Part shown: piece by piece, positions 22,600 through 64,000 of the stretch | Layout of the letters: each line of letters begins with the position of its first letter | Position numbering within the stretch: the stretch's first letter is position 1 | Source: Zootoca vivipara | Lineage: Eukaryota | Direction of reading: 5' to 3' | Assembly (NCBI RefSeq): GCF_963506605.1 | Contig: NC_083288.1 | Span: forward strand, 45,880,001 to 45,944,000 | Length of the DNA stretch: 64,000 nt | Translations under genes and position numbers: made by a program | The notes under the pieces: model-generated | What the model saw: the letters and a program-made list of their open reading frames with translations, nothing else | Told to the model about the DNA's origin: nothing | Database searches by the model: none

Positions 22600-25500
22600 T
22601 CAATTTAAGCATATCACCAGATGTATATTAAAATTTTCTTTTCTTAAATAATCTTCTACCTGTTTCCATTCCTTAATACATTTCTGTTTGGGGATGTTCC
22701 TAATTGCTGTGGTCATTTTATCTAGGTTCATGAATTCGACCAATTTCTCCTGCCACTCATATATTGTCGGCATTTTTTCACCCTTCCAGTTTTTAGCTAT
22801 CAATAGTCTGGCGGCTGCACTAGCATATGATAGTATATTTCTTTTTCCTTCAGGAATATTTTCTGGGATCATATACAATAAAAATATTTCTGGATTTTTG
22901 GGGAACGTCATTTTCAACATTTTTTTCAATTTTTCATATACTCCGTTCCAAAATTCTTGGATCTTGCCACATTGCCACCAGCAATGGTAATAGTTTCCAA
23001 TTTTCTCTTTACATTTCCAACATTTGTTGGAATCATTTTTGTATATTTTGGCAATTTTGGCCGGCGTAAGATGCCATCTGTAAACCATTTTAAGAATGTT
23101 CTCTTTAATTCCTGAGCACGCTGTAAATTTCATTCCTTCTTTCCAGAGTCTTTCCCATTTATTACTAAATATAGGTCTCCCTAAATCTTGGGCCCAACGT
23201 ATCATCGTGGTTTTTACCAATTCATCCTTTAATTCCCACTCGAGAAGGTAAGCATAAAATTTTGACATTGGCTTCTCGCCATTTTCCAGTAGTATCTCCT
23301 GGAATTTAGATTTATTTTCGGAAAAACCAATTTTCAGATGTTTAGTAAAAAGACTTTGGATCTGGCCATAATGAAGCCAGCTCATGCATTCTTGTTTAAG
23401 CTCATGATATGATTTCAATCTTAATTGTTCTCCCTCTCTTTCTAGGATATCCGAATACGTCGGCCATTTACTCTGCCTGAGTTTTCTGAATAATGCAGTT
23501 GCTTCCATAGGGGAGGCCCACCAAGGCGTTTTCTGCTCCAAGATATTTTTATATTCGTACCAAATTTTTAATAAAGATCCTTTGAACACATGGTTCTTAA
23601 ATTCTTTGTATCCGCCTTTTTTTTCTTCTAACAGATACTTGTGCCATCCCTGAGTGTTATTAAACCCTTCTATGTCTAATATCTCTTTATTCTCCAATTC
23701 TACCCATTCTTTTAGCCACACCAAGCCTGCTGACGCGTGATACAGTTTTAAGTCTGGGACCCCCCATCCTCCCCTCTCCCTTGTGTCAGTCAGCAATCTG
23801 TATTGTATCCTTGGCCTTTTTCTACCCCATATAAATTTGCTCAACCCCTTCCTCCATTTTTCGAATATTTCCTTTTTTTCCACAATTGGGAGCATTTGAA
23901 ATAAAAATGATAATTTAGGTAATATTACCATTTTGATCGCCGCTATCCTTGCAGAAAACGTCATTTGTAGGTTACCCCATCTTTCTAGCTCTCTCTCTAT
24001 TTCCTTCCATTTTTTGCCATAATTATTTTCGAATAGGTTTATATTTTTGGCTGTAATTTCGATTCCCAAATACTTCACTTTATTTACGATTTCCCATCCT
24101 GATTTTTCTCTCAATTCTTTTATCCCTTTTTCTCTTATATTTTTTGTAATAATTTTCGTTTTATTCATATTTATTTTAAAACCCGAAACTTTTCCATAAT
24201 CATTTAAGACTCTTTTCAAATGCCCTATTGTCTCTAGAGGATCCTCCAAAATTATAATGACGTCATCTGCAAAGGCTCGCGTTTTATACATGCTTCTTCC
24301 CACTTTAATTCCTTTGATCTTTTCACTTTCTTTTATTTCCTTCAATAAGCTTTCAATTGTTAGAATAAAAAGGAGGGGGGAGAGTGGACATCCCTGCCGG
24401 GTGCCCCTTGATATTTCAATTTCTTGGGAAAGCTCTCCATTTATTATCAAAATTCCTTTTTGTTTTTCATAAATTGAGTTTATACTTCTAAGAAAATTCC
24501 CTTCTATTCCTATTTCTTTAATTACTTCTTTCATATATTCCCAATTGACATTGTCGAATGCCTTCTCCGCGTCCAGGAATATCAAGGCGGCTTCCCGACC
24601 AGGGTTCCAGTCAAGGTATTCGATCAAATTAATCAGAATTCTGACATTATTATTCATCCTTCTTTTGGGGAGAAATCCTTGTTGTTCTTTTTCTATAATT
24701 CTATTTAGCACCTCCTTTAGTCTTTTTGCCATGATTGCTGCGAATATCTTGTAATCGACGTTTAATAGGGATATGGGCCTATAATTCTCGACTGAGTCTA
24801 TTTTGTCTCCCTTCGGTATGAGGGTTATAAAGGCCTCTTTCCAAGACTGGGGCATTTTCCCTTCTTCCATTATTTTATTAACTACTTTCACGTAAATCTC
24901 TCCTATTTCTTCCTTGAGGATTGTGTAGTGTCTACTCGAGAGCCCGTCCGTACCAGGGGACTTCCCTACTTTTAGATTTCCAATTATTTCATGTACCTCT
25001 TGCAAGGAAACAGGTTTGTTTAACCTTTCTTTCTCATCCTCACTTATCTTTTTTAACTTGTGTTTTCTAATATATTCTCTTATCATTTTCTCATTAATAT
25101 GGTCTCCTTTATACAAATTCCCATAATATTTCATGAAGCATTTATGAATATTTTCTCTCTTAACCCAATTTTTCCCATCCATTTTAATATTTGTGATTAT
25201 TCTTTCATTCTGTTTCTTTTTTAATTGCCAGGCCAATAATTTCCCCACTTTCCCTCCCATTTCAAAATTTCTTTGTTTGGCCCACTTAATTTTTTTCTCC
25301 ATTTCTTGTCCCGTTAATATTGATAACTCTGTTTGCAGGATTTTAATTTCAGATGCCACTTTGGCATCTTTGGGTTTTTTTACTAATTCTTTTTCTTTTT
25401 CCTCAAGTTCTTTTTGGATCTTATTTAAATTCTTTTCCCTTTGTCTTCTTATTTTACTCTTTTGTTGTATATATATCCCTCTAATAAAGGCTTTACTGGC

Positions 25501-26349
25501 GTCCCAGATTGTTTCCACCCCTTGTTCGCCTAATAGATTAATTTGAAAAAATTCTTTAACCAAATTCTTTATTTTGCCTACAAACTCATCATCACTTAAG
25601 ATGGTTTCGTCTAACCTCCATCTCCTTTTACTCCTATACTCTTCCTTTAAATTTAGCATTATTGGGTTATGGTCCGACAATGATTTCGTCATAATTTCAC
25701 ATTTGTCTAATTTAATCATTAACCTATTTGTGATCCAAATATTATCAATCCTTGCTGATGACCTTTGTACATTTGAATAAAATGTGTACTTTCTTTCCTC
25801 CGGATTTTCTAACCTCCAGCAATCTTGTAAATTATAGCTCTCTAATAATCTAAAGAAAATTTCCGGTAATTTGCCTTTATATTTCTTTCCTCCACTTGAC
25901 CTATCTAATTCCAGTTTTATTACTCCATTGAAATCTCCTGCTAGTATTACTTCTTCATCCTCAATACAATTTCCCATTAGCTTCCATAAATTTTTAAAGA
26001 ATTCAGTCTTTCCTCCATTTGGTACATACACATTTACCACCACAATTTCCCCTTCTGGTACATATAACTTAACCGCGATTGCTCTCCCCTCTTCGTCTTG
26101 AAAGAGTTTTTCTGCTCTAATCTTAGAGTCTACATATATAACTACTCCTCTCTTCTTTTTATTATTCAAGGAGACAAATTCATTTCCCAGTCTTTTGTTC
26201 GTCAACAATCTTTCATGTTTTTTTGATATATGTGTCTCCTGGAGACAAATTACCTTCCATTTACCTTTTTTCAAGATATGTTCAATTTTATTTCTTTTTA
26301 CTTTATTATTTAGGCCATTAATGTTCCAGGAGATTACCTTGAGGCTCAT
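22600..26349 (-). CDS. L1 ORF2p (APE endonuclease + reverse transcriptase + C-terminal domain)
   Basis: ISWNINGL, CLQETH, GDFN, SDHNP, NYRPISLLN, DAEKAFD, GTRQGCPLSPLLF, AFADD and CWKC...HCWWQC. Likely ATG at 26349. Confidence 0.95.
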   Translation of the reverse strand: MSLKVISWNINGLNNKVKRNKIEHILKKGKWKVICLQETHISKKHERLLTNKRLGNEFVSLNNKKKRGVVIYVDSKIRAEKLFQDEEGRAIAVKLYVPEGEIVVVNVYVPNGGKTEFFKNLWKLMGNCIEDEEVILAGDFNGVIKLELDRSSGGKKYKGKLPEIFFRLLESYNLQDCWRLENPEERKYTFYSNVQRSSARIDNIWITNRLMIKLDKCEIMTKSLSDHNPIMLNLKEEYRSKRRWRLDETILSDDEFVGKIKNLVKEFFQINLLGEQGVETIWDASKAFIRGIYIQQKSKIRRQREKNLNKIQKELEEKEKELVKKPKDAKVASEIKILQTELSILTGQEMEKKIKWAKQRNFEMGGKVGKLLAWQLKKKQNERIITNIKMDGKNWVKRENIHKCFMKYYGNLYKGDHINEKMIREYIRKHKLKKISEDEKERLNKPVSLQEVHEIIGNLKVGKSPGTDGLSSRHYTILKEEIGEIYVKVVNKIMEEGKMPQSWKEAFITLIPKGDKIDSVENYRPISLLNVDYKIFAAIMAKRLKEVLNRIIEKEQQGFLPKRRMNNNVRILINLIEYLDWNPGREAALIFLDAEKAFDNVNWEYMKEVIKEIGIEGNFLRSINSIYEKQKGILIINGELSQEIEISRGTRQGCPLSPLLFILTIESLLKEIKESEKIKGIKVGRSMYKTRAFADDVIIILEDPLETIGHLKRVLNDYGKVSGFKINMNKTKIITKNIREKGIKELREKSGWEIVNKVKYLGIEITAKNINLFENNYGKKWKEIERELERWGNLQMTFSARIAAIKMVILPKLSFLFQMLPIVEKKEIFEKWRKGLSKFIWGRKRPRIQYRLLTDTRERGGWGVPDLKLYHASAGLVWLKEWVELENKEILDIEGFNNTQGWHKYLLEEKKGGYKEFKNHVFKGSLLKIWYEYKNILEQKTPWWASPMEATALFRKLRQSKWPTYSDILEREGEQLRLKSYHELKQECMSWLHYGQIQSLFTKHLKIGFSENKSKFQEILLENGEKPMSKFYAYLLEWELKDELVKTTMIRWAQDLGRPIFSNKWERLWKEGMKFTACSGIKENILKMVYRWHLTPAKIAKIYKNDSNKCWKCKEKIGNYYHCWWQCGKIQEFWNGVYEKLKKMLKMTFPKNPEIFLLYMIPENIPEGKRNILSYASAAARLLIAKNWKGEKMPTIYEWQEKLVEFMNLDKMTTAIRNIPKQKCIKEWKQVEDYLRKENFNIHLVICLN

Positions 26350-26551
26350 TTCTTTATTAATATACTTTCTATCAACCACAGCAAAAATTTCAACTTTTAT
26401 TCAAAATTTTGATTCCCCGTTGAGACCCAAGAATTTTTACTATAAACAGGTGTGAGTAACTATGTGGTTATATAAGCAAAAAAGGTACTAAATCTAAAAT
26501 GAAAAAGGAAAGAAAAGGCAAAAGAAGATTATCTGCTAAGTCGCTATATTC

Positions 26552-27469
26552 TTACTCCTCTCCTTCCACCACCTGTCCCTCCTCTACACTGTTCTCCTCT
26601 CTTTCTCCTACTAACTCTCTCCAATTGTTCTTACTGAATCTTTCCGCTTCCTCTGGTGCTTTTATTGTTTTCTTTTTCCCTTTGAAGCTGAAGGTGAGTC
26701 CTTCTGGGTACTCCCAAACGTACCAAATATTTTTCTTCCTCAGAATATCAGTCAGGACTTTGTATCTTTGTCTCTTCAGTCGTATTCTTTTAGGCAGTTC
26801 TTTGTAAATGTCCACAATCTTTCCCTCTATTATTAGTTCATTCTGTTTTTTCGTTTGAAGGATCTTGTCCTTAAGGAGTATTGAATTTAGATACATCATG
26901 CAGTCTCCCACCGCTTTGCCATTCTTCTTCTTGTCGACTCTGATTCTATAAATTTTATCTATATCCAGCCACAAGGCGTCTTCTTCCACTTCCAGCCATC
27001 GGGCTATTTCTCTAACAATTCTCTCATCCACCCTTTCGTTAGCGATCTCCGGCACTCCCCTCAGGCGGAGGGTCAAGGCATTTTGTTTAAGTTCGAGCAT
27101 TGCCATCTGGTCCGCTATTTCTTCTTGCAGTTTCCTTAACTCAGCTCTCTCTTCCTCCTCCTTTTTTTGCATTCTTTGTATTTCTCTGTTTTCGTTTGCT
27201 ATTCTTTTTATAGATTCTTCTTGCTTATTCAATTTCACCGTCATTTCTTTTACTGTCTTGTCCAATTCTTTGTGTTTACTGCTCAGTTCTTTTATTTGGC
27301 CAGACATGGAGTCCAGTTTTTCACTCAACGATCTGTTCATTTCGGTGATGAGATCTTTAATTTCTGCTAATGGGTCGTTTTCTGATGTTAATGATAATCT
27401 CTTTGAGTTGCCTGCTGGATTTGCTGCCATTGCTGATGTTATTTTCCTTGTTGTCATATGGCCAGGCAT
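26552..27469 (-). CDS. L1 ORF1p (coiled coil + RRM/CTD)
   Basis: 305 aa, coiled-coil stretch followed by LRLRGVPE and YVWEYPEGLTF; lies upstream of ORF2. Confidence 0.9.
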   Translation of the reverse strand: MPGHMTTRKITSAMAANPAGNSKRLSLTSENDPLAEIKDLITEMNRSLSEKLDSMSGQIKELSSKHKELDKTVKEMTVKLNKQEESIKRIANENREIQRMQKKEEEERAELRKLQEEIADQMAMLELKQNALTLRLRGVPEIANERVDERIVREIARWLEVEEDALWLDIDKIYRIRVDKKKNGKAVGDCMMYLNSILLKDKILQTKKQNELIIEGKIVDIYKELPKRIRLKRQRYKVLTDILRKKNIWYVWEYPEGLTFSFKGKKKTIKAPEEAERFSKNNWRELVGEREENSVEEGQVVEGEE

Positions 27470-29549: not shown

Positions 29550-30451
29550 TTAATTCTTTCTCTTCATTATCTGATCTCTGCTGTTCAGTTCAGGCCTCAG
29601 CACAATGATGTAGCACTTAGGGAAAAAGATACAACCCAGTAACCCAGCAGTGGAGGCCAAGATGGAGAAGATCTCCACAGCCACCATGCCTTTCCCTCTT
29701 GTGCTCAAGTAAGTCGGAATAAAGGACAACCAAACACTGCAAAACGGCAGCATGCTGAATGTAATGAACTTTGCTTCATTAAAACTGTCAGGTAGCTTGC
29801 GTGCAAGGAATGCCACAATGAAGCTGGTGATGGCCAGGAGACCCATGTAGCCCAGGACACAATAAAACATGGTGACGGACCCTTCATTACATTGTACAAT
29901 GATTTCTTCATTTACTGAATGCATGTCTAAATCAGGGAATGGGGGAAAGGTTGAGAGCCACATGGTGCAAAAACCCATTTGAACAAGTGAACAGCAAACA
30001 GCAATTGAATATGACACTTTCTTCCCCATCCATTTCTTCACTCTTGATCCTGGTTTTGTGGCCATGAATGCTAGAGAAACAATGGTGGTTTTGGCCAACA
30101 CACAAGAAACAGCCACTGAGAAGATGATGCTGAAAGCTGGTTGTCGGAGAAGGCAGGCCAGTTTCCCAGGTTGGCCAAGGAATAACAAAGAGGAGAGGAA
30201 GCAGAGCAAGAGGGAGACGAGGAGAATGTAGGTGAGATCCCGGTTGTTGGCTTTGACTATGGGGGTATCTTTATGTTTAACGAAAGAAGCAAACACCAAT
30301 ATTGTGATGAAAGAAAAAGAAGCTGCAGCTGAAACTAAACCTTTGCCTAAAGGTTCTTCATAAGACAGAAAATGTATAAGTTTGGGGTTGCATTGATTTC
30401 TATTCTTGCTTGGATACCGATCTTCTGGGCATTTGAAACAGTCTCCCATAT
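29550..30451 (-). CDS. Vmn2r: V2R-C exon 6 (7TM)
   Basis: ORF 29550-30449. Confidence 0.92.
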
Positions 30452-37371: not shown

Positions 37372-38352
37372 TGTTGTTGTTGTTTAGTCGTTTAGTTGTG
37401 TCCGACTCTTCGTGACCCCATGGACCATAGCACGCCAGGCACTCCTGTCTTCCACTGCCTCCCGCAGTTTGGTCAAACTCATGTTCGTAGCTTCGAGAAC
37501 ACTGTCCAACCATCTTGTCCTCTGTCGTCCCCTTCTCCTAGTGCCCTCAATCTTTCCCAACATCAGGGTCTTTTCCAAGGATTCTTCTCTTCTCATGAGG
37601 TGGCCAAAGTATTGGAGCCTCAGCTTCACGATTTATCCTTCCAGGGAGCACTCAGGGCTGATTTCCTTAAGAATGGATAGGTTTTATCTTCTTGCAGTCC
37701 ATGGGACTCTCAAGTGTCTCCTCCAGCACCATAATTCAAAAGCATCAATTCTTCAGCGATCAGCCTTCTTCATGGTCCAGCTCTCACTTCCATACATCAC
37801 TACTGGGAAAACCATAGCTTTAACTATACGGACCTTTGTAGGCAAGGTAATGTCTCTGCTTTTTAAGATGCTGTCTAGGTTTGTCATTGCTTTTCTCCCA
37901 AGAAGCAGGCGTCTTTTAATTTCGTGACTGCTGTCACCATCTGCAGTGATCAAGGAGCCCAAGAAGGTGAAATCTCTCACTGCCTCCATTTCTTCCCCTT
38001 CTATTTGCCAGGAGGTGATGGGACTAGTGGCCATGATCTTGGTTTTTTTGATGTTGAGCTTCAGACCATATTTTGCGCTCTCCTCTTTCACCCTCATTAA
38101 AAGGTTCTTTAATTCCTCCTCACTTTCTGCCATCAAGGTTGTGTCATCTGCATATCTGAGGTTGTTGATATTTCTTCCGGAAATCTTAATTCTGGCTTGG
38201 GATTCATCTAGTCCAGCCTTTCGCATGATGAATTCTGCATATAAGTTAAATAAGCAGGGAGACAATATACAACCTTGTCGTACTCCTTTCCCAATTTTGA
38301 ACCACTCAGTTGTTCCATATCCAGTTCTAACTGTAGCTTCTTGTCCCACATA
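37372..38352 (-). mobile_element. 5'-truncated RTE-BovB
   Basis: ORFs 37753-38349 and 37384-37629 (one nonsense break), (CAA)n tail, short TSD taaggt. Confidence 0.92.
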
Positions 38353-39414: not shown

Positions 39415-40316
39415 TTAATGTTTTCTTCTTATTAGCTGCTCCCTGCTGTTCAGCTCAGGTCTCAACACAATGATGTAGCATTTGGGGCAAAAGATGCAGC
39501 CCAGTAGCCCAGCACTGGAGGCCAAGATAGAGAAGACTTCCACGGCCACCATGTCTTTTCCTCTGGTGCTCAGGTAAGTAGGAACAAAAGAGGCCCAAAC
39601 ACTACAAAATGCTAACATGCTGAATGTAATGAACTTGGCTTCATTGAAGCTGTCAGGTAACTTGCGGGCTAAGAATGCTACAACGAAGCTGGTGATGGCC
39701 AAGAGGCCCATGTAGCCTAAAACACTGTAGAACATGGTGACTGACCCTTCGTTACATTGCACAATAATTTCTCCACTTACTGAATGAAAGTCCAAATCGG
39801 GGAAGGGAGCCGAGGTTGCCAGCCACATAGTACAAATGCTTGCTTGAATAAGGGAGCAGGTTAAAACAATGAAGATGGCCAGTCTTTTCCCCACCCACTT
39901 CCTCACGCTGGAGCCTGGTCTGGTGGCCATGAAAGCTGTAACCACAGTGATGGTTTTGGCCAGGATGCAAGAAACAGCCAATGAGAAAATTATGATGAAA
40001 ATTGGTTGTCGGAGAAAGCAGGTCACAATACAAGGTTGGCCAAGGAATAACAAAGAAGAGAGGAAGCAGAACAAGAGGCAGAGGAGAAGAGTGTAGGTGA
40101 GGTCCCGATTGTTTGCTTTGACTATGGGTGTGTCCTTGTGCTTAATAAATATCCCTAGCACCACAACTGTGATGATGGACAAAAAAACAGCAACTGAAGC
40201 TAAACTGATCCCCAGAGGTTCTTTATAAGAGAGAAAGTTTCTAATTTTTGAAGTGCAAGAATCTCTGTTTTTGTTTGAATATTGGTCTGCCGGGCACTGG
40301 AAACAGTCTTCTGTAT
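39415..40316 (-). CDS. Vmn2r: V2R-D exon 6 (7TM)
   Basis: 902 nt; starts (D)[12 protein letters not shown] and is in frame with ORF 39415-40182. Confidence 0.92.
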
Positions 40317-50142: not shown

Positions 50143-50809
50143 TGTAATATGTTTATATTGTTTATATCCCCGTGTCCTTTGTTTTTAAATCTGATTGCAG
50201 TACCAAAAAAATGAACAGAAACAGGTCATAGCCTTAATTGATGAATCATATTTTTATTTCTTAAATTTGTTCAGATATGTGAGAAAAATGAAATGAATCA
50301 ACTGATATGGTATCCTGAACTAACTGATAGGGTAGGTCCACAGCTTCCATTGCCACAAACACCTCAGACGAAATGCAAATGTAATATCAGATTAGCATTA
50401 CAGTAGTATCAGTGTTCGAAACGCCCATTGTTCTAGTTGCATTTTATGACAGGGAATTTCATTAGCACAAACAGTTTGTGAGCTCTGGGCACAGTACTGT
50501 GCCTAAGATTTTAGATAAAAAATTGCAGAGTGGAAGGAAAGGATGACTTTTTACTGCCTCCCCACTGGAGAAGAGACCATCTTAAGAATATTAGGGAGGT
50601 GGGCAGGGGAAAAATTAGACAATGTGAAAAATAAACATAATATTTTAGCTGCAGTTCATTCATTTTCAGCTTTGTAGTCTTGTTATAAGAAATGTGCCTA
50701 GACATTCCATTTTTGAACCTATAACCTAGGTTTATGGTGTCGTTCAGTTCTTAGCATTCATATCTCAGTTTCTAACACTGAGTAGAATGTAAATATATTA
50801 TTGGATTCC

Positions 50810-51151
50810 TTAATTATATCTCTTTGCTAGTTGCTCTCTGATGTTCAGCTTGGGCTTCAGCAGAATAATGTAGCATTTAGGGACAAAGATACAACCCAAT
50901 AACCCAGCACCAGAGGCTAGTATGGAGAAGATCTCTACAGCTACCATATATTTCCCCTTGGTGCTCAGGTAGGTAGGGACAAAGGACATCCAAACACTAG
51001 AAAACATCAACATGCTGAAGGTGATAAATTTGGCCTCGTTGAAAGTGTCCGGCAACTTCCTGGCCAGGAAAGCCACATTGAAGCTGATGATGGCCAGAAG
51101 GCCCATGTATCCCAGGACAAGATAAAACATGAGGACGGAACCTTCGTTGCA
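50810..51151 (-). CDS. Vmn2r: V2R-E exon 6, 3' half (TM5-7)
   Basis: [17 protein letters not shown]...[10 protein letters not shown]...AKRYN*. Confidence 0.9.
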
Positions 51152-54100
51152 TCCTATATAATAATGTCCATGTTGTCCCTGCGTCCAGATGTCCCGTGTG
51201 TCCCTGGGTCACTGCGCATGTGCCCCAGGGATACAGGGATTGGACAGCAGAGACTGCGCGCGCGCACTCTCCCCCCACTCTGCCTCCTCCAACCGCCGCT
51301 CCCGCCGGGGTGGAGGCCGGCGAAGGCCTCCTCACAACCCTCCCTGGCCGTGAGGAGCGGCGGTTGGAGGAGGCGGGGGGGGGAGAGTGCGCGCGTCCTT
51401 CCTGTCGGCGGCTGGGGGAGAGGAAGGAAGGAGGAGAAAGCGCCGCTTTCTCCTCCTCCGTTCCTGTCCCCCTGCCGCCGACAGCAAGGACGGGTCCCAG
51501 GGTTCGGAGAAGCGCTGCGCAAGCGCTTCTCCGAACCCTGGGATGTCTGCTTCCTGTCGGCGGCTGCGGGAGAGGAACGGAGAAGGAGAAAGCAGCGCTT
51601 TCTCCTCCTCCGTTCCTGTCCCCCTGCCGCCGACAGCAAGGACGGGTCCCAGGGTTCGGAGAAGCGCTGCGCAAGCGCTTCTCCGAACCCTGGGATGTCT
51701 GCTTCCTGTCGGCGGCTGCGGGAGAGGAACGGAGAAGGAGAAAGCAGCGCTTTCTCCTCCTCCGTTCCTGTCCCCCTGCCGCCGACAGCAAGGACGGGTC
51801 CCAGGGTTCGGAGAAGCGCTGCGCAAGCGCTTCTCCGAACCCTGGGATGTCTGCTTCCTGTCGGCGGCTGCGGGAGAGGAACGGAGAAGGAGAAAGCAGC
51901 GCTTTCTCCTCCTCCGTTCCTGTCCCCCTGCCGCCGACAGCAAGGACGGGTCCCAGGGTTCGGAGAAGCGCTGCGCAAGCGCTTCTCCGAACCCTGGGAT
52001 GTCTGCTTCCTGTCGGCGGCTGCGGGAGAGGAACGGAGAAGGAGAAAGCAGCGCTTTCTCCTCCTCCGTTCCTGTCCCCCTGCCGCCGACAGCAAGGACG
52101 GGTCCCAGGGTTCGGAGAAGCGCTGCGCAAGCGCTTCTCCGAACCCTGGGATGTCTGCTTCCTGTCGGCGGCTGCGGGAGAGGAACGGAGAAGGAGAAAG
52201 CAGCGCTTTCTCCTCCTCCGTTCCTGTCCCCCTGCCGCCGACAGCAAGGACGGGTCCCAGGGTTCGGAGAAGCGCTGCGCAAGCGCTTCTCCGAACCCTG
52301 GGATATCTGCTTCCTGTCGGCGGCTGCGGGAGAGGAACGGAGAAGGAAAAAGCAGCGCTTTCTCCTCCTCCGTTCCTGTCCCCCTGCCGCCGACAGCAAG
52401 GACGGGTCCCAGGGTTCGGAGAAGCGCTGCGCAAGCGCTTCTCCGAACCCTGGGATGTCTGCTTCCTGTCGGCGGCTGCGGGAGAGGAACGGAGAAGGAG
52501 AAAGCAGCGCTTTCTCCTCCTCCGTTCCTGTCCCCCTGCCGCCGACAGCAAGGACGGGTCCCAGGGTTCGGAGAAGCGCTGCGCAAGCGCTTCTCCGAAC
52601 CCTGGGATGTCTGCTTCCTGTCGGCGGCTGCGGGAGAGGAACGGAGAAGGAGAAAGCAGCGCTTTCTCCTCCTCCGTTCCTGTCCCCCTGCCGCCGACAG
52701 CAAGGACGGGTCCCAGGGTTCGGAGAAGCGCTGCGCAAGCGCTTCTCCGAACCCTGGGATGTCTGCTTCCTGTCGGCGGCTGCGGGAGAGGAACGGAGAA
52801 GGAGAAAGCAGCGCTTTCTCCTCCTCCGTTCCTGTCCCCCTGCCGCCGACAGCAAGGACGGGTCCCAGGGTTCGGAGAAGCGCTGCGCAAGCGCTTCTCC
52901 GAACCCTGGGATGTCTGCTTCCTGTCGGCGGCTGCGGGAGAGGAACGGAGAAGGAGAAAGCAGCGCTTTCTCCTCCTCCGTTCCTGTCCCCCTGCCGCCG
53001 ACAGCAAGGACGGGTCCCAGGGTTCGGAGAAGCGCTGCGCAAGCGCTTCTCCGAACCCTGGGATGTCTGCTTCCTGTCGGCGGCTGCGGGAGAGGAACGG
53101 AGAAGGAGAAAGCAGCGCTTTCTCCTCCTCCGTTCCTGTCCCCCTGCCGCCGACAGCAAGGACGGGTCCCAGGGTTCGGAGAAGCGCTGCGCAAGCGCTT
53201 CTCCGAACCCTGGGATATCTGCTTCCTGTCGGCGGCTGCGGGAGAGGAACGGAGAAGGAAAAAGCAGCGCTTTCTCCTCCTCCGTTCCTGTCCCCCTGCC
53301 GCCGACAGCAAGGACGGGTCCCAGGGTTCGGAGAAGCGCTGCGCAAGCGCTTCTCCGAACCCTGGGATGTCTGCTTCCTGTCGGCGGCTGCGGGAGAGGA
53401 ACGGAGAAGGAGAAAGCAGCGCTTTCTCCTCCTCCGTTCCTGTCCCCCTGCCGCCGACAGCAAGGACGGGTCCCAGGGTTCGGAGAAGCGCTGCGCAAGC
53501 GCTTCTCCGAACCCTGGGATGTCTGCTTCCTGTCGGCGGCTGCGGGAGAGGAACGGAGAAGGAGAAAGCAGCGCTTTCTCCTCCTCCGTTCCTGTCCCCC
53601 TGCCGCCGACAGCAAGGACGGGTCCCAGGGTTCGGAGAAGCGCTGCGCAAGCGCTTCTCCGAACCCTGGGATGTCTGCTTCCTGTCGGCGGCTGCGGGAG
53701 AGGAACGGAGAAGGAGAAAGCAGCGCTTTCTCCTCCTCCGTTCCTGTCCCCCTGCCGCCGACAGCAAGGACGGGTCCCAGGGTTCGGAGAAGCGCTGCGC
53801 AAGCGCTTCTCCGAACCCTGGGATGTCTGCTTCCTGTCGGCGGCTGCGGGAGAGGAACGGAGAAGGAGAAAGCAGCGCTTTCTCCTCCTCCGTTCCTGTC
53901 CCCCTGCCGCCGACAGCAAGGACGGGTCCCAGGGTTCGGAGAAGCGCTGCGCAAGCGCTTCTCCGAACCCTGGGATATCTGCTTCCTGTCGGCGGCTGCG
54001 GGAGAGGAACGGAGAAGGAAAAAGCAGCGCTTTCTCCTCCTCCGTTCCTGTCCCCCTGCCGCCGACAGCAAGGACAGGTCCCAGGGTTCGGAGAAGCGCT

Positions 54101-54165
54101 GCGCAAGCGCTTCTCCGAACCCCAGGATTCTAGCGCCCGTTATTGAACGGGCTGAAAACCACTAG
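51152..54165 (+). mobile_element. Non-autonomous Helitron (3014 bp)
   Basis: 5' TCCTATATAATAA, 3' CTAG, subterminal hairpin GCCCGTT-attg-AACGGGC (54135-54152), inserted between host A (51151) and T (54166) with no TSD. Confidence 0.93.
51399..54127. repeat. ~18 x 152-bp GC-rich tandem array, each unit containing two hairpins
   Basis: ggatgtctgc recurs every 152 bp (51541, 51693, ...). Hairpin 1 has 40-bp arms (36/40 matched); hairpin 2 has perfect 22-bp arms. Confidence 0.97.
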
Positions 54166-54725
54166 TTCAACTATAATCTCTGTAGCCTGGGAGTGCATGT
54201 CCAAATCTGGGAATGGGGGAGAGATTGCCAGCCAAACCACACAAATGCCTGCTTGAAAAAGAGAGCCTGAAAGCACAATGGAGTTGGCCAGTCTTTTGCC
54301 CACCCACTTCCTCATGCTAGATCCTGGTTTGGTGGCCATAAAAGCAATCACAACAGTGATGGTTTTAGCCAACACACAAGAAACAGCCATAGAGAAGATG
54401 ATGCCAAAAGTAGTTTGACGGAGAATGCAGGTCACCTTCGTAGGTCTTCCAAGAAACAGCAAAGAACAGAGGAAGCAGAGGAGGAGGGAGACAAGGAGAA
54501 TGTAGCTGATGTCCCGATTGTTGGCTTTGACGATGGGGGTATCTCTGTGCTTGATGAAAAGTCTTAGCACGAAAGTGGTGATGAGTGAAAGAGAAACAGA
54601 AACCGAACTAAGGCTGATCCCCAAAGATTCTTCAAAAGAAATGAATGTCATAAGCTTGGAGATGCATCTATCTCTACTCTGTTTAGGATATTGATCATCT
54701 GGGCATTTAAAGCATTCATCCATGT
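54166..54725 (-). CDS. Vmn2r: V2R-E exon 6, 5' half (CRD end, TM1-4)
   Basis: MDECFKCPDDQY...DLDMHSQATEIIVE, then reads into the Helitron and stops at 54130. Confidence 0.9.
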
Positions 54726-54817
54726 CTGAAAAAGGAAAGGAGATTCATCATCACTGTGCCAATTTATACGCAAATTGTATCTGAGTCTTAGGACTGTATA
54801 GTGGTTGGTTATTCTTT

Positions 54818-55446: not shown

Positions 55447-56100
55447 AGTGGTTGGTTATTCTTTAGCCAATGAATCAGAGCTGTGATTGGCAAGTGACTT
55501 GAAAAAGAAACAACACCTAAGCAACAGAAGTCCATGTTGGCCTCTCCAAAAACAATACTACTGTATTCCATCCCCTTTGGTGCACTTTTTCAGTTTCTGT
55601 CTCATTTTCTAGAGCTTGGAATCTCAGTAGTTTGCCCTTCTCTTCTTCCTAGGAACAAGGATGCATATTTCCTTTGGTGAATTTCTCTGAACTCAGGTTA
55701 CTCAGTATAAATCTTTTCTTTTCTTTTTTCAAATACAGCTATACAATAGCTACTGTGTATATTAAGAAATCCTCTGCCCTCACACAGCAAAAGCAACATT
55801 AGAAAAAGAAGAAATGCTTAGCCTGTCTCCTAGGATGCAGGAGCTAAAGTCTAGGCCCTACTTAAGAATTCATTGTATAGTATACTTACACAAATCTTAT
55901 GCAACTTGCAGATCCATGAGCTCTTTTATGAATGAGCCATGGCCAAATATACCTCCAGTCCCCTGAACCCATAACATCTTGTTGGCATCCCTGTCTGCGC
56001 CTGCCAAAAAATGGCTGGGAGAGGACAAAAGTCAACCCACCACTGAACATATTCTCAATCCCCAAGTGTTCCCTGTGGGTTGCATTCTGTCTCCCATCAG

Positions 56101-57095
56101 CTACTGCTGCTCTGCCAGGGAGTGTTTGGGAGGACTGCTCCCCCTGAAGCCCACTTCCACCTGGGGCTTGGGGCGGGTCCCCCACTCCACCACAGCTTTT
56201 AAGACTCCTGGGAGGCCTGGAACATCAGTGCTGCTGTGAGTACTGGAAGGACTGCTCCCCCTGAAGCCCACTTCCACCTTGGGCTTGGGGCGGGTCCCCC
56301 ACTCCACCACAGCTTTTAAGGCTCCTGGGAGGCCTGGAACATTGCTGCTGCTGCTGCTCTGCCAGGGAGTGTTTGGGAGGACTGCTCCCCCTGAAGCCCA
56401 CTTCCACCTGGGGCTTGGGGCGGGTCCCCCACTCCACCACAGCTTTTAAGGCTCCTGGGAGGCCTGGAACATCAGTGCTGCTGTGAGTACTTGAAGGACT
56501 GCTCCCCCTGAAGCCCACTTCCACCTTGGGCTTGGGGCGGGTCCCCCACTCCACCACAGCTTTTAAGGCTCCTGGGAGGCCTGGAACATTGCTGCTGCTG
56601 CTGCTCTGCCAGGGAGTGTTTGGGAGGACTGCTCCCCCTGAAGCCCACTTCCACCTGGGGCTTGGGGCGGGTCCCCCACTCCACCACAGCTTTTAAGGCT
56701 CCTGGGAGGCCTGGAACATCAGTGCTGCTGTGAGTACTTGAAGGACTGCTCCCCCTGAAGCCCACTTCCACCTGGGGCTTGGGGCGGGTCCCCCACTCCA
56801 CCACAGCTTTTAAGGCTCCTGGGAGGCCTGGAACATTGCTGCTGCTGCTGCTCTGCCAGGGAGTGTTTGGGAGGACTGCTCCCCCTGAAGCCCACTTCCA
56901 CCTGGGGCTTGGGGCGGGTCCCCCCACTCCACCACAGCTTTTAAGGCTCCTGGGAGGCCTGGAACATCACTGCTGCTGTGAGTACTGGAAGGACTGCTCC
57001 CCCTGAAGCCCACTTCCACCTTGGGCCCGGGGGCGGGACCCATACTCTACCATAGCTTTAAGGCTCCTAGGAGGCCTGAAACAGTGCCGCTGCTG
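56101..57095. repeat. 4 x 247-bp higher-order repeat (117+130-bp subunits) upstream of the L2 ORF
   Basis: gccaggg at 56114, 56361, 56608 and 56855; shared ~95-bp core aggactgctccccctgaagccc...ggcctggaacat occurs 8 times. Confidence 0.93.
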
Positions 57096-57571
57096 CTTTT
57101 CTTGTAATTCTGATGTGTTTGTAACTTTTATTGTTTTTGGTTTTTGTTTATCGTTTAGTCTGTTAGTTTGTTTTCTGTATTGGTTTTAAATTCGATTTTA
57201 AGGGGAGGGGTTAATTTTAGTTTGTAATTTTCTGTCTTTGTTTGTATTGTTTTATTGCATTAGTTTGTTTTCTGTATTGGTTTTAAATTTGATTTTAAGG
57301 GGAGGGGTCAATTTTAGTTTGTAATTTTCTGTCTTTGTATTGTTTTACTGTATTTTTTGATTTACATAGGTTTTAGGGAGGGATTTTTAGTCGGGTGTGG
57401 GAATCTGTTAAATTTTAGTGTATTTGTAATTTTTATTGTTTTTGGTTTTATTGTTTTATTGTGTTTTTTGTGTTTTTCTTTTGTTCTGTTCTTTGCTGTT
57501 TTTACAGAGGTTTTATTTTGTTTTTAAGGGGAGGGGTCAGGGCTGCCCGGGAGGGGGTCCCAGCAAGCAAA

Positions 57572-60500
57572 ATGGCTGGGGCAGATTCCACAGGGGGTGA
57601 TGCACTGGGACAACCGATCTCAGTGGTCACGGGTAGGAGGAGGAGTTACGCTAAGACCAGACCATGTCATTACCGAGGAGGCAGACTTAGTCGTTGTCTG
57701 AGGACTATCCCTGCCTCCGGGTCTGGTCCTGACCGGACGGATATTGGAATCAGCAAGGGATACCCACATGACCTGAAGGTGCTGCTGTGCAATGCCAGGT
57801 CGATGATGAATAAGACCACTGCCATTCACGACCTGATTGTGGATGGAGGATTTGACCTGGCATGTGTGACAGAGACCTGGTTGGATGAAGCCGATGGGCC
57901 CGTTCTTGGCGCTGCTTGTCCACCAGGTTTCTCTTATGCACAGCAACCCAGGCCATCTGGGCGGGGAGGGGGGGTTGCAGTGATTTTTAGGAAGTCATTA
58001 GTTTGTACCAGGCGTCCTATTGGTAAGACGGAGTTTTCTGAGTGCATGTTCTGGAAGTTGGGCAATAGGGGCAGTACAGGATTCCTTTTGGTGTACCGAC
58101 CTCCCCGCTGCACCAAGGATTCCCTGCCCGAGCTGCTTCAGGTCGTGTCGGATGTGCTCCTGGAGACACCTAGCTTGGTTGTCTTAGGGGATTTTAACAT
58201 CCATGCCGACACGACCTTACAAGGAGCCGCTCGGGACTTTGTGGAAAGCATGGCCACCATGGGGCTGTCCCTGAATAAGTCTGGCCCAACTCATAGCCGC
58301 GGACATGCCTTGGACTTGGTGTTCACCTCTATGGATGTTGGTGATCTGACATTAAGTAAAAGCGAAACAAAAGAAGTGCCATGGTCAGATCACTTTCTGG
58401 TGCAACTGGACTTCTCCGCAACCCTTCCCCTCTGCAGGGAGGTGGGACCGATTCGGATGGTCCGCCCCCGCTACTTAATGGATCCAATTGGCTTCCAGAG
58501 AGTGGTAGGGGATGTTTTATCCCATGTCGATGGCCTTTCAGCTGATTCCCTGGTGGCCCGCTGGAATGCGGAGTTAACCAGCGCTATTGACTGTCTGGCT
58601 CCGAAGCGCCCTCTCAGATTGCATGGAGCCCGGACAGCCCCGTGGTTTTCCCCGGCGCTGAGGGTGATGAAACAGTCGTTGAGACGGCTAGAGCGCCGGT
58701 GGCGGAAAACTCATTTTGAATCAGACCGGACACGGGCTAGAGCTCAAATTCGAGCCTACCAAGTGGCAATGGCGACGGCGAAGAGGACCTTCTTCACCGT
58801 CTCCATCGCATCTGCAGAAAACAGCAGCAGGAGACTCTTCCAGGTGGTTCGCAATTTAGCGGAACCACCTGCTCCATCCGGGCCCAGTACGGGCCACATG
58901 ATCTCCTGCAATGATTTTGCAAAGTTTTTTGCAGATAAAGTCGCTCAGATTCGGGAAGAGGTAGACTCCACCGTGGGGGCAGGGCCGGGGCAGGGGAGTG
59001 CTAGAGTCCTGTCTAGTCAAGTTTTGTGGGATCAATTTCAATCTGTTACCTCCGAGGATGTGGACAGGCTGCTTCGACGAGTGAAACCAACCACCTGTCT
59101 CCTTGATCCTTGCCCATCCTGGCTTATAAAAGCTAGCCAGGAAGGGCTGGGCGATGGGCTTCGCGGGTTGGTAAATGCTTCTCTCCATGAAGGAGCCTTC
59201 CCAGACCCGCTGAAAGAGGCGGTTATTAAACCGCTTCTTAAAAAACCATCTTTAGATCCGGCCAATATGGCCAACTATCGCCCAGTCTCAAATCTTCCAT
59301 TCTTGGGCAAGGTGGTTGAGCGAGTGGTTGCTGAACAACTTCAGGCACGCCTGGAAGAAGCGGACCATTTGGATCCCTTCCAGTCAGGATTCAGGCCTCA
59401 TCATGGGACTGAAACTGCCTTGGTCGCACTGGTCGATGATCTCCGGCGGGCTAGGGACAAAGGTAAGAGCTGTTTCCTTGTTCTGCTGGATCTCTCAGCG
59501 GCTTTTGACACCATCGACCATAACATCCTTCTGGATCGTCTAGAGGGTTTGGGAGCTGGGGGCACTGTCATGCAGTGGTTCCGCTCCTTCCTCCTGGGCC
59601 GTGTTCAGAAAGTGGTGGTGGGGGATGAGTGTTCAGACCCCTGGGCTCTCACTTGTGGGGTGCCTCAGGGTTCTGTCCTCTCCCCCATGCTTTTTAACAT
59701 CTATATGCAGCCGCTGGGAGAGATCATCAGGGGGTTTGGGCTGGGTGTCCATCAGTATGCTGATGATACCCAGCTCTACCTCTCTTTTAAATCAGAACCA
59801 GTGAAGGCAGTGAAGGTCCTGTGTGAGTGCTTGGAGGCGGTTGGAGGATGGATGGCGGCTAACAGATTGAGATTGAATCCTGACAAGACAGAAGTACTGT
59901 TTGTGGGGGACAGGAGGCGGGCAGGTGTGGAGGACTCCCTGGTCCTGAATGGGGTAACTGTGCCCCTGAAAGACCAGGTGCGCAGCCTGGGAGTCATCTT
60001 AGACTCACAGCTGTCCATGGAGGCACAGGTCAACTCTGTGTCCAAGACAGCTGTTTATCAGCTCCATCTGGTACGCAGGCTGAGTCCCTACCTGCCCGCT
60101 GACTGTCTCTCCAGAGTGGTGCATGCTCTAGTTATCTCTCGCTTGGACTACTGCAATGCGCTCTACGTGGGGCTACCTTTGAAGGTGACCCGGAAACTAC
60201 AACTAATCCAGAATGCGGAAGCTAGACTGGTGACTGGGAGCGGCCGCCGAGACCACATAACACCGGTCCTGAAAGACCTACATTGGCTCCCAGTACGTTT
60301 CCGAGCACAATTCAAAGTGTTGGTGTTGACCTTTAAAGCCCTAAACGGCCTCGGTCCGGTATACCTGAAGGAGCGTCTCCACCCCCATCGTTCTGCCCGG
60401 ACACTGAGGTCCAGCTCCGAGGGCCTTCTGGCGGTTCCCTCACTACGAGAAGCCAAGTTACAGAGAACCAGGCAGAGGGCCTTCTCGGTAGTGGCACCCA

Positions 60501-60604
60501 CCCTGTGGAATGCCCTCCCACTAGAGGTCAAAGAGAACAACAATTACCAGACCTTTAGAAGGCATCTCAAGGCAGCCCTGTTTAGGGAAGCTTTTAATGT
60601 TTGA
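57572..60604 (+). CDS. L2 ORF2 (APE endonuclease + RT), intact
   Basis: LCNARS, CVTETWL, GDFNIH, SDHFLV, NYRPVSNLPFLGK, LLDLSAAFDTIDH, GVPQGSVLSP and QYADDTQLY. First ATG at 57572. Confidence 0.93.
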   Translation: MAGADSTGGDALGQPISVVTGRRRSYAKTRPCHYRGGRLSRCLRTIPASGSGPDRTDIGISKGYPHDLKVLLCNARSMMNKTTAIHDLIVDGGFDLACVTETWLDEADGPVLGAACPPGFSYAQQPRPSGRGGGVAVIFRKSLVCTRRPIGKTEFSECMFWKLGNRGSTGFLLVYRPPRCTKDSLPELLQVVSDVLLETPSLVVLGDFNIHADTTLQGAARDFVESMATMGLSLNKSGPTHSRGHALDLVFTSMDVGDLTLSKSETKEVPWSDHFLVQLDFSATLPLCREVGPIRMVRPRYLMDPIGFQRVVGDVLSHVDGLSADSLVARWNAELTSAIDCLAPKRPLRLHGARTAPWFSPALRVMKQSLRRLERRWRKTHFESDRTRARAQIRAYQVAMATAKRTFFTVSIASAENSSRRLFQVVRNLAEPPAPSGPSTGHMISCNDFAKFFADKVAQIREEVDSTVGAGPGQGSARVLSSQVLWDQFQSVTSEDVDRLLRRVKPTTCLLDPCPSWLIKASQEGLGDGLRGLVNASLHEGAFPDPLKEAVIKPLLKKPSLDPANMANYRPVSNLPFLGKVVERVVAEQLQARLEEADHLDPFQSGFRPHHGTETALVALVDDLRRARDKGKSCFLVLLDLSAAFDTIDHNILLDRLEGLGAGGTVMQWFRSFLLGRVQKVVVGDECSDPWALTCGVPQGSVLSPMLFNIYMQPLGEIIRGFGLGVHQYADDTQLYLSFKSEPVKAVKVLCECLEAVGGWMAANRLRLNPDKTEVLFVGDRRRAGVEDSLVLNGVTVPLKDQVRSLGVILDSQLSMEAQVNSVSKTAVYQLHLVRRLSPYLPADCLSRVVHALVISRLDYCNALYVGLPLKVTRKLQLIQNAEARLVTGSGRRDHITPVLKDLHWLPVRFRAQFKVLVLTFKALNGLGPVYLKERLHPHRSARTLRSSSEGLLAVPSLREAKLQRTRQRAFSVVAPTLWNALPLEVKENNNYQTFRRHLKAALFREAFNV

Positions 60605-60980: not shown

Positions 60981-61107
60981 CCATTTGGTCAGAGATCTTC
61001 CCTTCTGGGCATGGAGCACAATCATAGCAGCAAAACTTCTCACCTTCCTTCTTTTTCTTCTGATAACCAGTGCGGCAAGAATCTCCACATACAGAAATAG
61101 GTGTCAC
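60981..61107 (-). CDS. Vmn2r: V2R-E exon 5
   Basis: VTPISVCGDSCRTG...[17 protein letters not shown], 127 nt. Confidence 0.9.
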
Positions 61108-61347: not shown

Positions 61348-61575
61348 CTGCTTAAAGCTGCTGTGCCACACAATGATATTGTCATTAATGGTGAATTGTT
61401 TCCCTTCCCCAGCACTCGGATCCATCATTCCAACTTTCATTTTAATAAAGGAATTGTTTGGGAACAGGTCCATGTTCATGATATCAAATCTGGCTATCAA
61501 TTCCCCATGGTCATCAAAAAACATTTTTTCTCCAGCTGAGTTGTTAAAAGAAATTCTTTGAAGAAAGGAGTGAAG
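61348..61575 (-). CDS. Vmn2r: V2R-E exon 4
   Basis: 228 nt, [16 protein letters not shown]...WHSSFKQ. Confidence 0.9.
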
Positions 61576-62659: not shown

Positions 62660-63523
62660 CTGCCAAGGTTGAACACTGTGAAGGTCAAGACTTTCAAACG
62701 CCATCACTGCTCTGTACTTGACCCAAGAGGAGTAAGTGGCATGCAAAGCATGTGCTATAGCATAGACGGCATTATAGACACTGTAACTGTGGCCAGTCAT
62801 GCCCATTTCAAACACAGACCTGGGAAGGCTTTCCGGTTTCTCATCTCCAGTACATGTTGCATTCAGTATCTCCGACAACACGGAATTTGAAAAAGAACAT
62901 TCAAACGCCTGCTCCCAGAAAACTTTGAAAAATCCATCTTCATCTGCAGAGTTGGGTTTTTTGTTCTGGATATATGTTTGGAACCCATTAGGTTCATTTG
63001 AGTGAATTGCGAAAGATATGGCTCCATGGAATAGTTGAAAATTCCATGTCCTTATCATGGATGTTACAGAAAAATCTATCTGAGCTGTCATAATCCATAC
63101 TTTCCCAACAGAAGTGACTTCATTATATTCATGGAAGAATATAGCTACTATGGTGGTCAACCACATGATGGTCATAGTTTCACCATAAGTGACAAAAGCT
63201 GTGGCTTTGCTCTCCATGAAAGGGATGTTAATACTCCACCCCATATCAATCAATTCATCAAAAGAAAGGAAATTGCCTTGGTTTGGGATTCTTTGTATGA
63301 AAGCTGGACAGATTCTATTCTGGGAAAGCAGGGGCTCTAAAGCCTGCAAAAAATGGTCTCCACTGTCATCATCCACAGCAAAGAGCCCAATCCATGTCCA
63401 TCCAAAATGCTGAAGCAAATGGATAATGCCCATATACTGCTGGGATTCACTGGGCACCATGCGGTAAAAGGAAGAGGCATGTTTTGTATGACCCTCTTTC
63501 AGGGCAAAGGATCCATACGCAAG
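62660..63523 (-). CDS. Vmn2r: V2R-E exon 3
   Basis: 864 nt, open, LAYGSF...VQPWQ. Confidence 0.9.
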
Positions 63524-63954: not shown

Positions 63955-64000
63955 CAGGGGTCAGCAAACTTTTTCAGCAGGGGGCCGGTCCACTGTCCCT
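63955..64000. mobile_element. Start of a hAT (Charlie-like) element cut by the window edge
   Basis: CAGGGGTCAGCAAACTTTTT terminus. Confidence 0.55.

What the first reader, a model, noticed from the sequence alone, without database searches (positions are those of the whole stretch)
51152..54165. Young non-autonomous Helitron cleanly splits the 7TM exon of a V2R
Seen: exact Helitron hallmarks (5' TC, 3' CTAG, a GC hairpin 9 nt before CTAG, A|T target, no TSD). The insertion falls between the Glu and Cys codons of IIVE|CNEG. Removing it restores a 902-nt exon 6 with no other lesion, and exons 3-5 are open. With it present, translation stops at 54130 after TM4. Established: these termini define rolling-circle Helitrons, which are patchily distributed in vertebrates (e.g. 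vesper bats, some squamates). Inference: this is a very recent, possibly still polymorphic, Helitron knockout of a chemoreceptor, implying recent RepHel activity in this genome.
Basis: partly seen in the sequence, partly recalled or inferred. Interest (0 to 1): 0.85.

Follow-up and report, generated by a model that had tools for sequence, protein, structure and literature searches.

The report
Helitron insertion disrupting a lizard V2R exon
A 3-kb non-coding "rolling-circle" transposon (Helitron) has landed exactly between two codons of the last exon of a vomeronasal receptor gene and truncates it; the case is clean, but young Helitrons are already documented in lizards.

Summary
Window 51152-54165 (+) is a 3,014-bp insert that starts with TC and ends with CTAG. 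A 7-bp GC hairpin lies 9 nt upstream of the CTAG. The insert sits between host A (51151) and T (54166), with no target-site duplication and no terminal inverted repeats.

It splits the 902-nt last exon of a minus-strand V2R between Glu and Cys (IIVE|CNEGS). No host base is lost or gained compared with four paralogues in the window. Exons 3-5 are open with canonical splice sites. With the insert present, translation stops at 54130-54132, after TM4.

Raw reads from two other individuals of the same species show several hundred copies of the 5' end. All break from heterogeneous AT-rich flanks exactly at 51151/51152, and most keep the A. A relative about 6% diverged shows no depth on the element.

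This is a non-autonomous canonical Helitron. Its cargo is a 246-bp palindromic leader and 17.9 copies of a 152-bp double-hairpin unit. Its end motifs resemble the published Heli1Xen1 family.

Recency is supported only circumstantially, and polymorphism could not be tested. Young, polymorphic Helitrons are already known in lizards, so interest is modest.

The parts
51152..54165 (+). Whole non-autonomous Helitron (3,014 bp), antisense to the V2R gene
   Evidence: Termini and target site. The content leaves no room for a RepHel gene.
51151..51151 (.). Host A at the 5' side of the A|T target. It is the T of the Cys codon TGC on the gene strand.
   Evidence: In other copies the read alignments start at this A: 213 + 73 reads in X20 and 302 + 95 reads in X21.
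54166..54166 (.). Host T at the 3' side of the target. It is the last A of the Glu codon GAA on the gene strand.
51152..51245 (+). 5' terminal region (LTS) shared by the largest number of genomic copies; starts TC followed by a TA-rich stretch
   Evidence: Depth is about 440-600 here against about 1 in unique flank. Many other copies diverge at 51211 and after 51245.
51259..51395 (+). Long imperfect palindrome in the leader (42-nt arms; the outer 18 nt are 100% complementary)
   Evidence: Many other copies carry an extra 35 nt at 51308.
51398..54122 (+). 152-bp x 17.9 tandem array. Each unit forms two long hairpins. The array is organised as three blocks of 6 units.
   Evidence: TRF reports 99% matches. 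Hairpins. Units 2-7 equal units 8-13 over 912 bp, and 237 CpGs are intact.
54135..54152 (+). 3' subterminal hairpin: 7-bp stem GCCCGTT/AACGGGC with loop ATTG
54162..54165 (+). 3' terminus CTAG (CTRR)
54166..54725 (-). V2R exon 6, upstream 560 nt (TM1-TM4), ending ...IIVE
50810..51151 (-). V2R exon 6, downstream 342 nt (CNEGS... TM5-TM7, with the stop TAA at 50810-50812)
54130..54132 (-). Premature stop (TAG) reached after 11 Helitron-encoded residues
   Evidence: ORF 54130..54723
60981..61107 (-). V2R exon 5 (127 nt, NCD3G domain)
61348..61575 (-). V2R exon 4 (228 nt)
62660..63523 (-). V2R exon 3 (864 nt, ANF_receptor domain)

Best explanation
A non-autonomous canonical Helitron integrated between an A and a T in the last exon of a V2R chemoreceptor gene, antisense to the gene. 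It is a rolling-circle ('peel-and-paste') DNA transposon mobilised in trans by a RepHel protein encoded elsewhere. By established Helitron biology, RepHel nicks at the 5' TC end and unwinds the element. It stops at the 3' hairpin-plus-CTAG signal and pastes the single strand into an AT dinucleotide without duplicating the target. This mechanism is inferred here, not shown. The sequence shows directly that the receptor is now truncated after TM4, with 11 foreign residues and then a stop, so this allele cannot make a 7TM receptor. The element carries no gene. Its cargo is a palindromic leader and an 18-unit array of a 152-bp double-hairpin repeat. It belongs to a family of several hundred copies in this species. 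The family was not seen in one related species. Its end motifs resemble Heli1Xen1, a family reported as recently and horizontally acquired in lacertid and cordylid lizards. The insertion is probably young, well under about 10 My and possibly far less. Whether it still segregates is unknown.
For: The insert starts with TC, ends with CTAG and has a hairpin 9 nt upstream. The target is A|T, with no TSD and no TIR. The exon is restored to the base relative to three paralogues, and the Pfam 7tm_3 profile is contiguous across the two halves. In raw reads of two individuals, depth jumps from about 1 to 440-600 at 51152. In those reads, 286 and 397 reads have heterogeneous AT-rich upstream sequence (agreement 0.35) that ends at 51151 or 51150, which indicates a precise terminus with a conserved A at -1. 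Subfamily break points at 51211, 51245 and 51308 fit 'shared ends, variable cargo'. There is no depth on the element in contigs of organism B. Those contigs do cover the neighbouring exon (3 of 138 mismatches) and the flank (about 5-7% mismatches). Youth indicators are three: exons 3-6 are open with canonical splice sites; array blocks are 100% identical over 912 bp; and none of 237 CpGs has decayed. Literature: Heli1Xen1 ends are described as TC, TATATAAA, hairpin CCCGTTA...TAACGGG and CTAG, with the family in Lacerta, Zootoca, Darevskia and Hemicordylus and an invasion 0.58-10.7 Mya (PMC12001565).
Against: The 3' boundary and the T at +1 rest on this locus alone, because reads could be laid only on the left junction. 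No read or contig shown bridges flank and element, so the filled junction is not independently confirmed. No autonomous partner was seen. The host species is coded, so assignment to a named family rests on short printed motifs only. Array identity can reflect homogenisation rather than youth. Exons 1-2 are outside the window, so the gene may already have been dead.
Confidence: 0.85

Rival explanations
1. The insertion is real, but it is old and fixed rather than a recent or segregating event. On this reading the clean ORF is luck and the uniform array reflects ongoing homogenisation.
For: About 2.1 kb of visible coding sequence can stay open for millions of years after inactivation; this is a rough estimate from neutral rates, an inference. 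Tandem arrays homogenise by unequal exchange, and the 6-unit block pattern shows such events occurred. No empty allele was observed.
Against: The family shows no depth in a relative about 6% diverged. None of 237 CpGs has been lost. No position in the leader was listed where most family reads differ from this copy (table cut). In the two lizard systems studied, Helitron insertions are mostly young or at low frequency (PMC7561263, PMC12001565).
Confidence: 0.4
2. The V2R was already a pseudogene, through a lesion in exons 1-2 or the promoter outside the window, when the Helitron landed. The Helitron would then not be the knock-out.
For: Exons 1-2 lie beyond base 64000 and could not be examined. 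V2R clusters usually contain many pseudogenes (general knowledge). The cluster is very large according to first-stage notes.
Against: Exons 3-6 total 2,121 nt. They have no stop or frameshift, four canonical acceptors and three canonical donors.
Confidence: 0.15
3. It is an assembly artefact: a repeat block wrongly placed inside the exon, or an array of the wrong length.
For: No bridging read or contig was displayed. An array with 99% identical 152-bp units is hard to assemble, so its copy number could be wrong.
Against: A chimeric join would not restore the exon to the base, sit at an A|T, and coincide with the exact family terminus defined by hundreds of independent reads. The window has no N.
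Confidence: 0.03
4. It is a different kind of mobile element: a Helentron/Helitron2, a TIR transposon, or a non-mobile satellite expansion.
For: Tandem arrays carried inside rolling-circle elements are best documented for Helentrons (PMC7492417).
Against: There are no terminal inverted repeats, no TSD and no TA duplication. The target is A|T rather than T|T, and the end is CTAG with a subterminal hairpin.
Confidence: 0.02

Closest known systems
Heli1Xen1 Helitron family (Li & Pollet 2025, PMC12001565)
   Same: It is a canonical Helitron with 5' TC followed by a TA-rich stretch (paper: TATATAAA; here TCCTATATAATAA). Its 3' hairpin is CCCGTTA...TAACGGG (here CCCGTTA-TTG-AACGGG) and it ends in CTAG. 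Hundreds to thousands of short non-autonomous copies are reported. It is young (0.58-10.7 My) and patchily distributed, and it occurs in lizards (Lacerta, Zootoca, Darevskia, Hemicordylus).
   Different: Only the short motifs printed in the paper could be compared. The paper notes capture of tandem repeats as a possibility and lists Helitron-derived arrays of 2-7 units in Xenopus, not an 18-unit hairpin array.
Anolis carolinensis Helitron-2N1..5_AC / HeligloriaB (Novick et al. 2011, PMC3014272; Thomas et al. 2010, PMC2997563; Bourgeois et al. 2020, PMC7561263)
   Same: These are non-autonomous lizard Helitrons of 0.5-2 kb, with about 600 to more than 1,000 copies and about 2% divergence. In the green anole 19,266 polymorphic Helitron insertions were found and almost none were fixed. 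This shows that young, segregating Helitron insertions in a lizard are established.
   Different: No sequence comparison was possible. Those families are described as internal-deletion derivatives of the autonomous element, not as carriers of a hairpin tandem array.
Non-autonomous Helentrons carrying satellite-like arrays in the Pacific oyster (Vojvoda Zeljko et al. 2020, PMC7492417)
   Same: A non-autonomous rolling-circle element whose interior is a short tandem array, which disperses satellite-like repeats through the genome.
   Different: A different Helitron-like group (Helentron: TIR-like ends, T|T target) in a mollusc. Here the ends and target are those of a canonical Helitron, in a vertebrate.

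Membership tests
Canonical Helitron (non-autonomous) | 5' terminus TC | tested here: met
   The element starts TCCTATATAA at 51152. Reads from hundreds of copies break at this point.
Canonical Helitron (non-autonomous) | 3' terminus CTRR | tested here: met
   CTAG at 54162-54165. This is shown at this locus only.
Canonical Helitron (non-autonomous) | GC-rich hairpin about 10-20 nt from the 3' end | tested here: met
   A 7-bp stem at 54135-54152, 9 nt before CTAG. The fold is -8.1 kcal/mol, and 4 of 200 shuffles fold as well.
Canonical Helitron (non-autonomous) | Insertion between host A and T, with no target-site duplication | tested here: met
   Met at this locus. The A at -1 is kept in roughly 84% or more of other copies, inferred from the loose-end rows. 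The T at +1 in other copies was not tested.
Canonical Helitron (non-autonomous) | No terminal inverted repeats | tested here: met
   11 of 40 ungapped matches; the best local match is 5 nt.
Canonical Helitron (non-autonomous) | Dispersed multi-copy family with unrelated flanks | tested here: met
   Depth is 440-600 against about 1. Flank consensus agreement is 0.35.
Canonical Helitron (non-autonomous) | Autonomous RepHel-encoding partner with the same ends | not testable with these tools
   None is present in the 64-kb window. The genome was not available for search.
Heli1Xen1 | Terminal motifs: TC plus TATATAAA, and hairpin CCCGTTA...TAACGGG plus CTAG | tested here: inconclusive
   There is close motif-level resemblance: 13 of 14 hairpin-arm letters match (against the text of PMC12001565).
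Heli1Xen1 | RepHel 81-100% identical to the family consensus | not testable with these tools
   This copy is non-autonomous, and the supplementary sequences are not held.
Helentron / Helitron2 | Short terminal inverted repeats and a T|T target | tested here: not met
   No TIR is present and the target is A|T.
V2R (class C GPCR, vomeronasal type 2) | ANF_receptor + NCD3G + 7tm_3 domains | tested here: met
   E-values are 4e-20, 4e-15, 6e-46 and 5e-34.
V2R (class C GPCR, vomeronasal type 2) | Six-exon layout with a long exon 3 and the 7TM in the last exon, in a tandem cluster of paralogues | tested here: met
   Exons 3-6 are 864, 228, 127 and 902 nt. Four more genes lie in the same orientation in the window. 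Exons 1-2 were not seen.
V2R (class C GPCR, vomeronasal type 2) | Phylogenetic placement with V2Rs rather than CaSR or T1R | not tested
   No tree was built. The label rests on the domains and the tandem cluster.

The most novel reading that the evidence does not exclude
The insertion is a still-segregating presence/absence null allele made by a Helitron family that is transposing now in this lizard's germline. Three observations fit this. The family was unseen in a relative about 6% diverged. Its depth differs about 1.4-fold between two individuals, while a neighbouring unrelated repeat is equal. This copy shows no decay. The locus would then give a natural, datable Helitron integration in an amniote, with both the filled and the empty allele available. 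It would also show a Helitron dispersing and growing a hairpin satellite in a vertebrate.
Probability: 0.4. Interest if true: 0.45.

Novelty: new member of a known kind. Interest (0 to 1): 0.3.

Why it matters
This is a textbook-clean example of a vertebrate exon knocked out by a Helitron, with the empty site inferable to the base. If it is polymorphic, it is a natural V2R null allele and a direct marker of ongoing Helitron activity. One V2R among a multi-megabase cluster is unlikely to matter much to the animal. Recent Helitron activity in lizards is already published. The main value is therefore as a well-characterised copy of a family that carries a hairpin tandem array, which is relevant to how rolling-circle elements seed satellites in vertebrates.

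Tried and rejected
The right junction, the T at +1 in other copies, and the empty allele therefore remain untested.

2. In one search no displayed contig bridges 51151/51152. The contigs stop near the boundary, as expected at a repeat edge. This counts neither for nor against the insertion.

3. Exact scans for both termini in metagenome contigs and viral contigs found nothing. These collections are not expected to hold lizard DNA, so the blank says little.

4. A full-text search for the terminal strings found no paper. 'Helitron' plus 'vomeronasal' gave no relevant paper. Supplementary sequences of the key papers are not held.

5. No other copy of the leader, unit or tail is present in the window.

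6. Rfam found no match anywhere in the window.

The species stayed coded, and I did not try to get around that.

8. The long ORFs of 920-1,024 aa across the array in all six frames are rejected as genes. The 152-bp unit simply contains no stop codon in any frame.

9. I considered rescue by splicing the element out. On the gene strand the insert starts CTAG and ends ...TATATAGGA. The nearest GT and AG would leave 5 extra nt and shift the frame. This is inferred from sequence; no RNA data were examined.

10. The two exon halves were analysed separately by reference. The joined (empty-site) exon was deliberately not built or searched.

Full report
**What is in the sequence.**
- On the + strand an insert runs from 51152 to 54165. 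It begins TCCTATATAATAATG directly after a host A at 51151. It ends ...CCACTAG directly before a host T at 54166.
- Nine nucleotides before the terminal CTAG lies a hairpin at 54135-54152, with a 7-bp stem GCCCGTT/AACGGGC and loop ATTG. It dominates the predicted single-strand fold; 4 of 200 shuffles fold as well.
- The two ends are not inverted repeats: 11 of 40 positions match, and the best local match is 5 nt. No direct repeat of 1-12 bp flanks the insert.
- The only ambiguity is one T, which could belong to either side.
- Both terminal strings occur once in the window and are not expected by chance.

**The host gene.**
- On the minus strand, 54732..54166 translates without a stop and ends ...ATEIIVE. 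51151..50813 continues [10 protein letters not shown]... to a TAA at 50810-50812.
- Pfam 7tm_3 matches the first piece at profile positions 2-156 (E 6e-46) and the second at 158-251 (E 5e-34).
- Against three intact paralogous 7TM exons in the same window, the first piece ends at paralogue nucleotide 558 and the second starts at 559. Nothing was lost or duplicated. The paralogues read EEIIVQ|CNEGS there.
- The exon starts at 54725 behind TTTTTCAG, giving 560 + 342 = 902 nt.
- I analysed the two halves separately by reference.
- With the insert present, the frame runs 11 codons into the element and stops at 54130-54132. That is just before the conserved extracellular-loop cysteine, so only TM1-TM4 would be made.
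- Upstream, three exons are open with canonical AG/GT sites and consistent phases:
  - exon 5: 60981-61107, NCD3G, E 4e-15
  - exon 4: 61348-61575
  - exon 3: 62660-63523, ANF_receptor, E 4e-20
- Exons 1-2 lie beyond the window.

**Anatomy of the insert.**
- It consists of a 246-bp leader, a tandem array and a 43-bp tail that carries the hairpin and CTAG.
- The leader contains a long imperfect palindrome at 51259-51395.
- The array spans 51398-54122 and holds 17.9 copies of a 152-bp unit at 99% identity.
- Each unit folds into two long hairpins, with arms of about 49 and about 39 nt.
- The array has a 6-unit higher-order pattern. Units 2-7 and 8-13 are identical over 912 bp. Units 14-18 equal the same block minus one unit, with one change.
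- Units 2-18 contain 237 CpGs, and no unit has lost one.
- ORFs of about 920-1,024 aa cross the array in all six frames. This is because the unit has no stop codon in any frame. They are not genes, and there is no room for a RepHel protein. The element is therefore non-autonomous.

**Evidence from other individuals.**
I therefore laid window 50200-51900 only.
- In raw reads of two other individuals of the same species label (about 1.5 Gb read each), unique flank has a depth of about 0-3. Depth then rises to 440 and 606 in 51169-51225, about 130-190 in the palindrome, and about 110-220 per position in the array.
- The 5' end is therefore present in several hundred copies at 92% identity or better. 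Fewer copies share this cargo.
- In these two runs, 213 + 73 and 302 + 95 reads align from 51151 or 51150 onward and carry unrelated, AT-rich sequence upstream (consensus agreement 0.35).
- The 51308 rows of the same output show how to read this table: the listed place is an aligned base. These reads therefore share the A at -1.
- No row for 51152 appears among the rows kept, so roughly 84% or more of copies have that A. This is an inference from a truncated table.
- This pattern is what a mobile element looks like when it has an exact 5' terminus and inserts after an A in AT-rich DNA.
- Further break points fit a family with shared ends and variable interiors. They lie at 51211, at 51245, and at 51308, where many other copies carry an extra 35 nt.
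- About 80% of family reads carry A where this array has G (51492 and its periodic equivalents). A similar share carries G where this array has A (51583 and 51735). This copy therefore carries a minority variant of the unit.
- Contigs of a related species (organism B) cover the exon up to 51145 (3 of 138 mismatches) and the 3' flank (about 5-7% mismatches). They show essentially no depth anywhere on the element. The family appears restricted to the lineage of organism A. This rests on one run of contigs, so the evidence is weak.
- No read or contig shown bridges the junction. No test for an empty allele was possible.

**Interpretation.**
- All sequence-defined features of a canonical Helitron were tested and met. 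These are TC, CTRR, a subterminal hairpin, an A|T target without duplication, no TIRs and dispersed copies.
- The alternatives fail: a Helentron needs TIRs and a T|T target, and a TIR transposon needs TIRs and a TSD.
- The transposition mechanism is taken from established Helitron biology, not shown here. In that model a RepHel protein nicks at the TC end, unwinds the element, terminates at the hairpin/CTAG signal and integrates at an AT.
- The functional consequence follows directly from the sequence: this allele encodes a receptor lacking TM5-TM7.

**How young is it.**
- Several observations favour youth:
  - about 2.1 kb of otherwise intact coding sequence
  - intact CpGs and identical array blocks
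  - no listed leader position where most family reads differ from this copy
  - absence of the family from a relative about 6% diverged
- Several cautions apply:
  - Open reading frames can survive millions of years of neutrality.
  - Arrays homogenise.
  - The difference table was cut.
- I therefore regard 'young' as likely, and 'very recent or polymorphic' as plausible but untested.
- The family's depth is about 1.4-fold higher in one individual than in the other, while an unrelated neighbouring repeat has equal depth. This could mean copy-number polymorphism, or GC bias between libraries.

**Comparison with what is known.**
- Young non-autonomous Helitron families with hundreds to thousands of copies are described in Anolis (PMC3014272, PMC2997563).
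- In the green anole, 19,266 polymorphic Helitron insertions were found, with almost none fixed (PMC7561263).
- Li & Pollet (PMC12001565) describe Heli1Xen1. It is a canonical family with TC, a TATATAAA-like 5' stretch, the hairpin CCCGTTA...TAACGGG and a CTAG end.
- They found Heli1Xen1 in Lacerta, Zootoca, Darevskia and Hemicordylus, dated its invasion to 0.58-10.7 Mya, and reported insertion polymorphism in Xenopus.
- The element here has very similar end motifs. This is a lead to membership, not a test, because no consensus could be aligned and the host species is coded.
- Arrays inside non-autonomous rolling-circle elements are known mainly from oyster Helentrons (PMC7492417).
- No paper linking Helitrons to vomeronasal receptor disruption was found.

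**Verdict.** The core of the interpretation, a Helitron knock-out of a V2R, is supported. Recency is only circumstantial. The broader implication is already known, so this is a new member of a known kind with modest interest.

Noticed in passing
window 51398-54122: The Helitron's 152-bp array is built of three 6-unit blocks. Two blocks are 100% identical over 912 bp. The unit has no stop codon in any of the six frames and keeps all 237 CpGs. About 80% of family reads carry a different base at two unit positions, so this copy carries a minority variant that was amplified as a block.
   Followed up: partly
window 51152-51900 (reads): Depth of the Helitron family is about 1.4-fold higher in individual X21 than in X20, and reads 99% or more alike are 3.6-fold more numerous. 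The unrelated repeat at 50599-50712 has equal depth in both. This could be copy-number polymorphism of the family, or GC bias between libraries.
   Followed up: no
window 51308: Many other copies of the family carry an extra 35 nt (ACACCGCCTCACTGCAGG...) at the centre of the leader palindrome. That segment is absent from this copy.
   Followed up: no
window 50428-50826: A high-copy repeat lies directly 3' of the V2R stop codon, with depth about 130-145 against about 1. It is shared by organism A and the related organism B. It explains the 0.15-0.16 share of words found in the other species' runs.
   Followed up: no
window 56100-60604 (+), inside V2R intron 5: An apparently intact LINE sits here. 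It has a 1,047-aa ORF with endonuclease (Exo_endo_phos) and reverse transcriptase domains. It is preceded by four copies of a 247-bp tandem repeat (97% identity) at 56100-57097.
   Followed up: partly
window 22600-27469 (-): Two long ORFs lie in tandem, of 305 aa and 1,259 aa. This looks like a full-length, possibly intact L1-type LINE.
   Followed up: no
window 2629-42144 (-): Four further V2R genes lie in the same orientation, each with an intact 7TM exon (2629-3528, 11535-12434, 29550-30449, 39415-40182) and a long exon 3. They are only about 74-79% identical in DNA to the disrupted gene.
   Followed up: partly
window 19859-21487 (-) and 37753-38349 (-): Two copies of a reverse-transcriptase ORF (542 aa and 198 aa, nearly identical in the shared part). 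They suggest a recently active RTE/BovB-like LINE.
   Followed up: no
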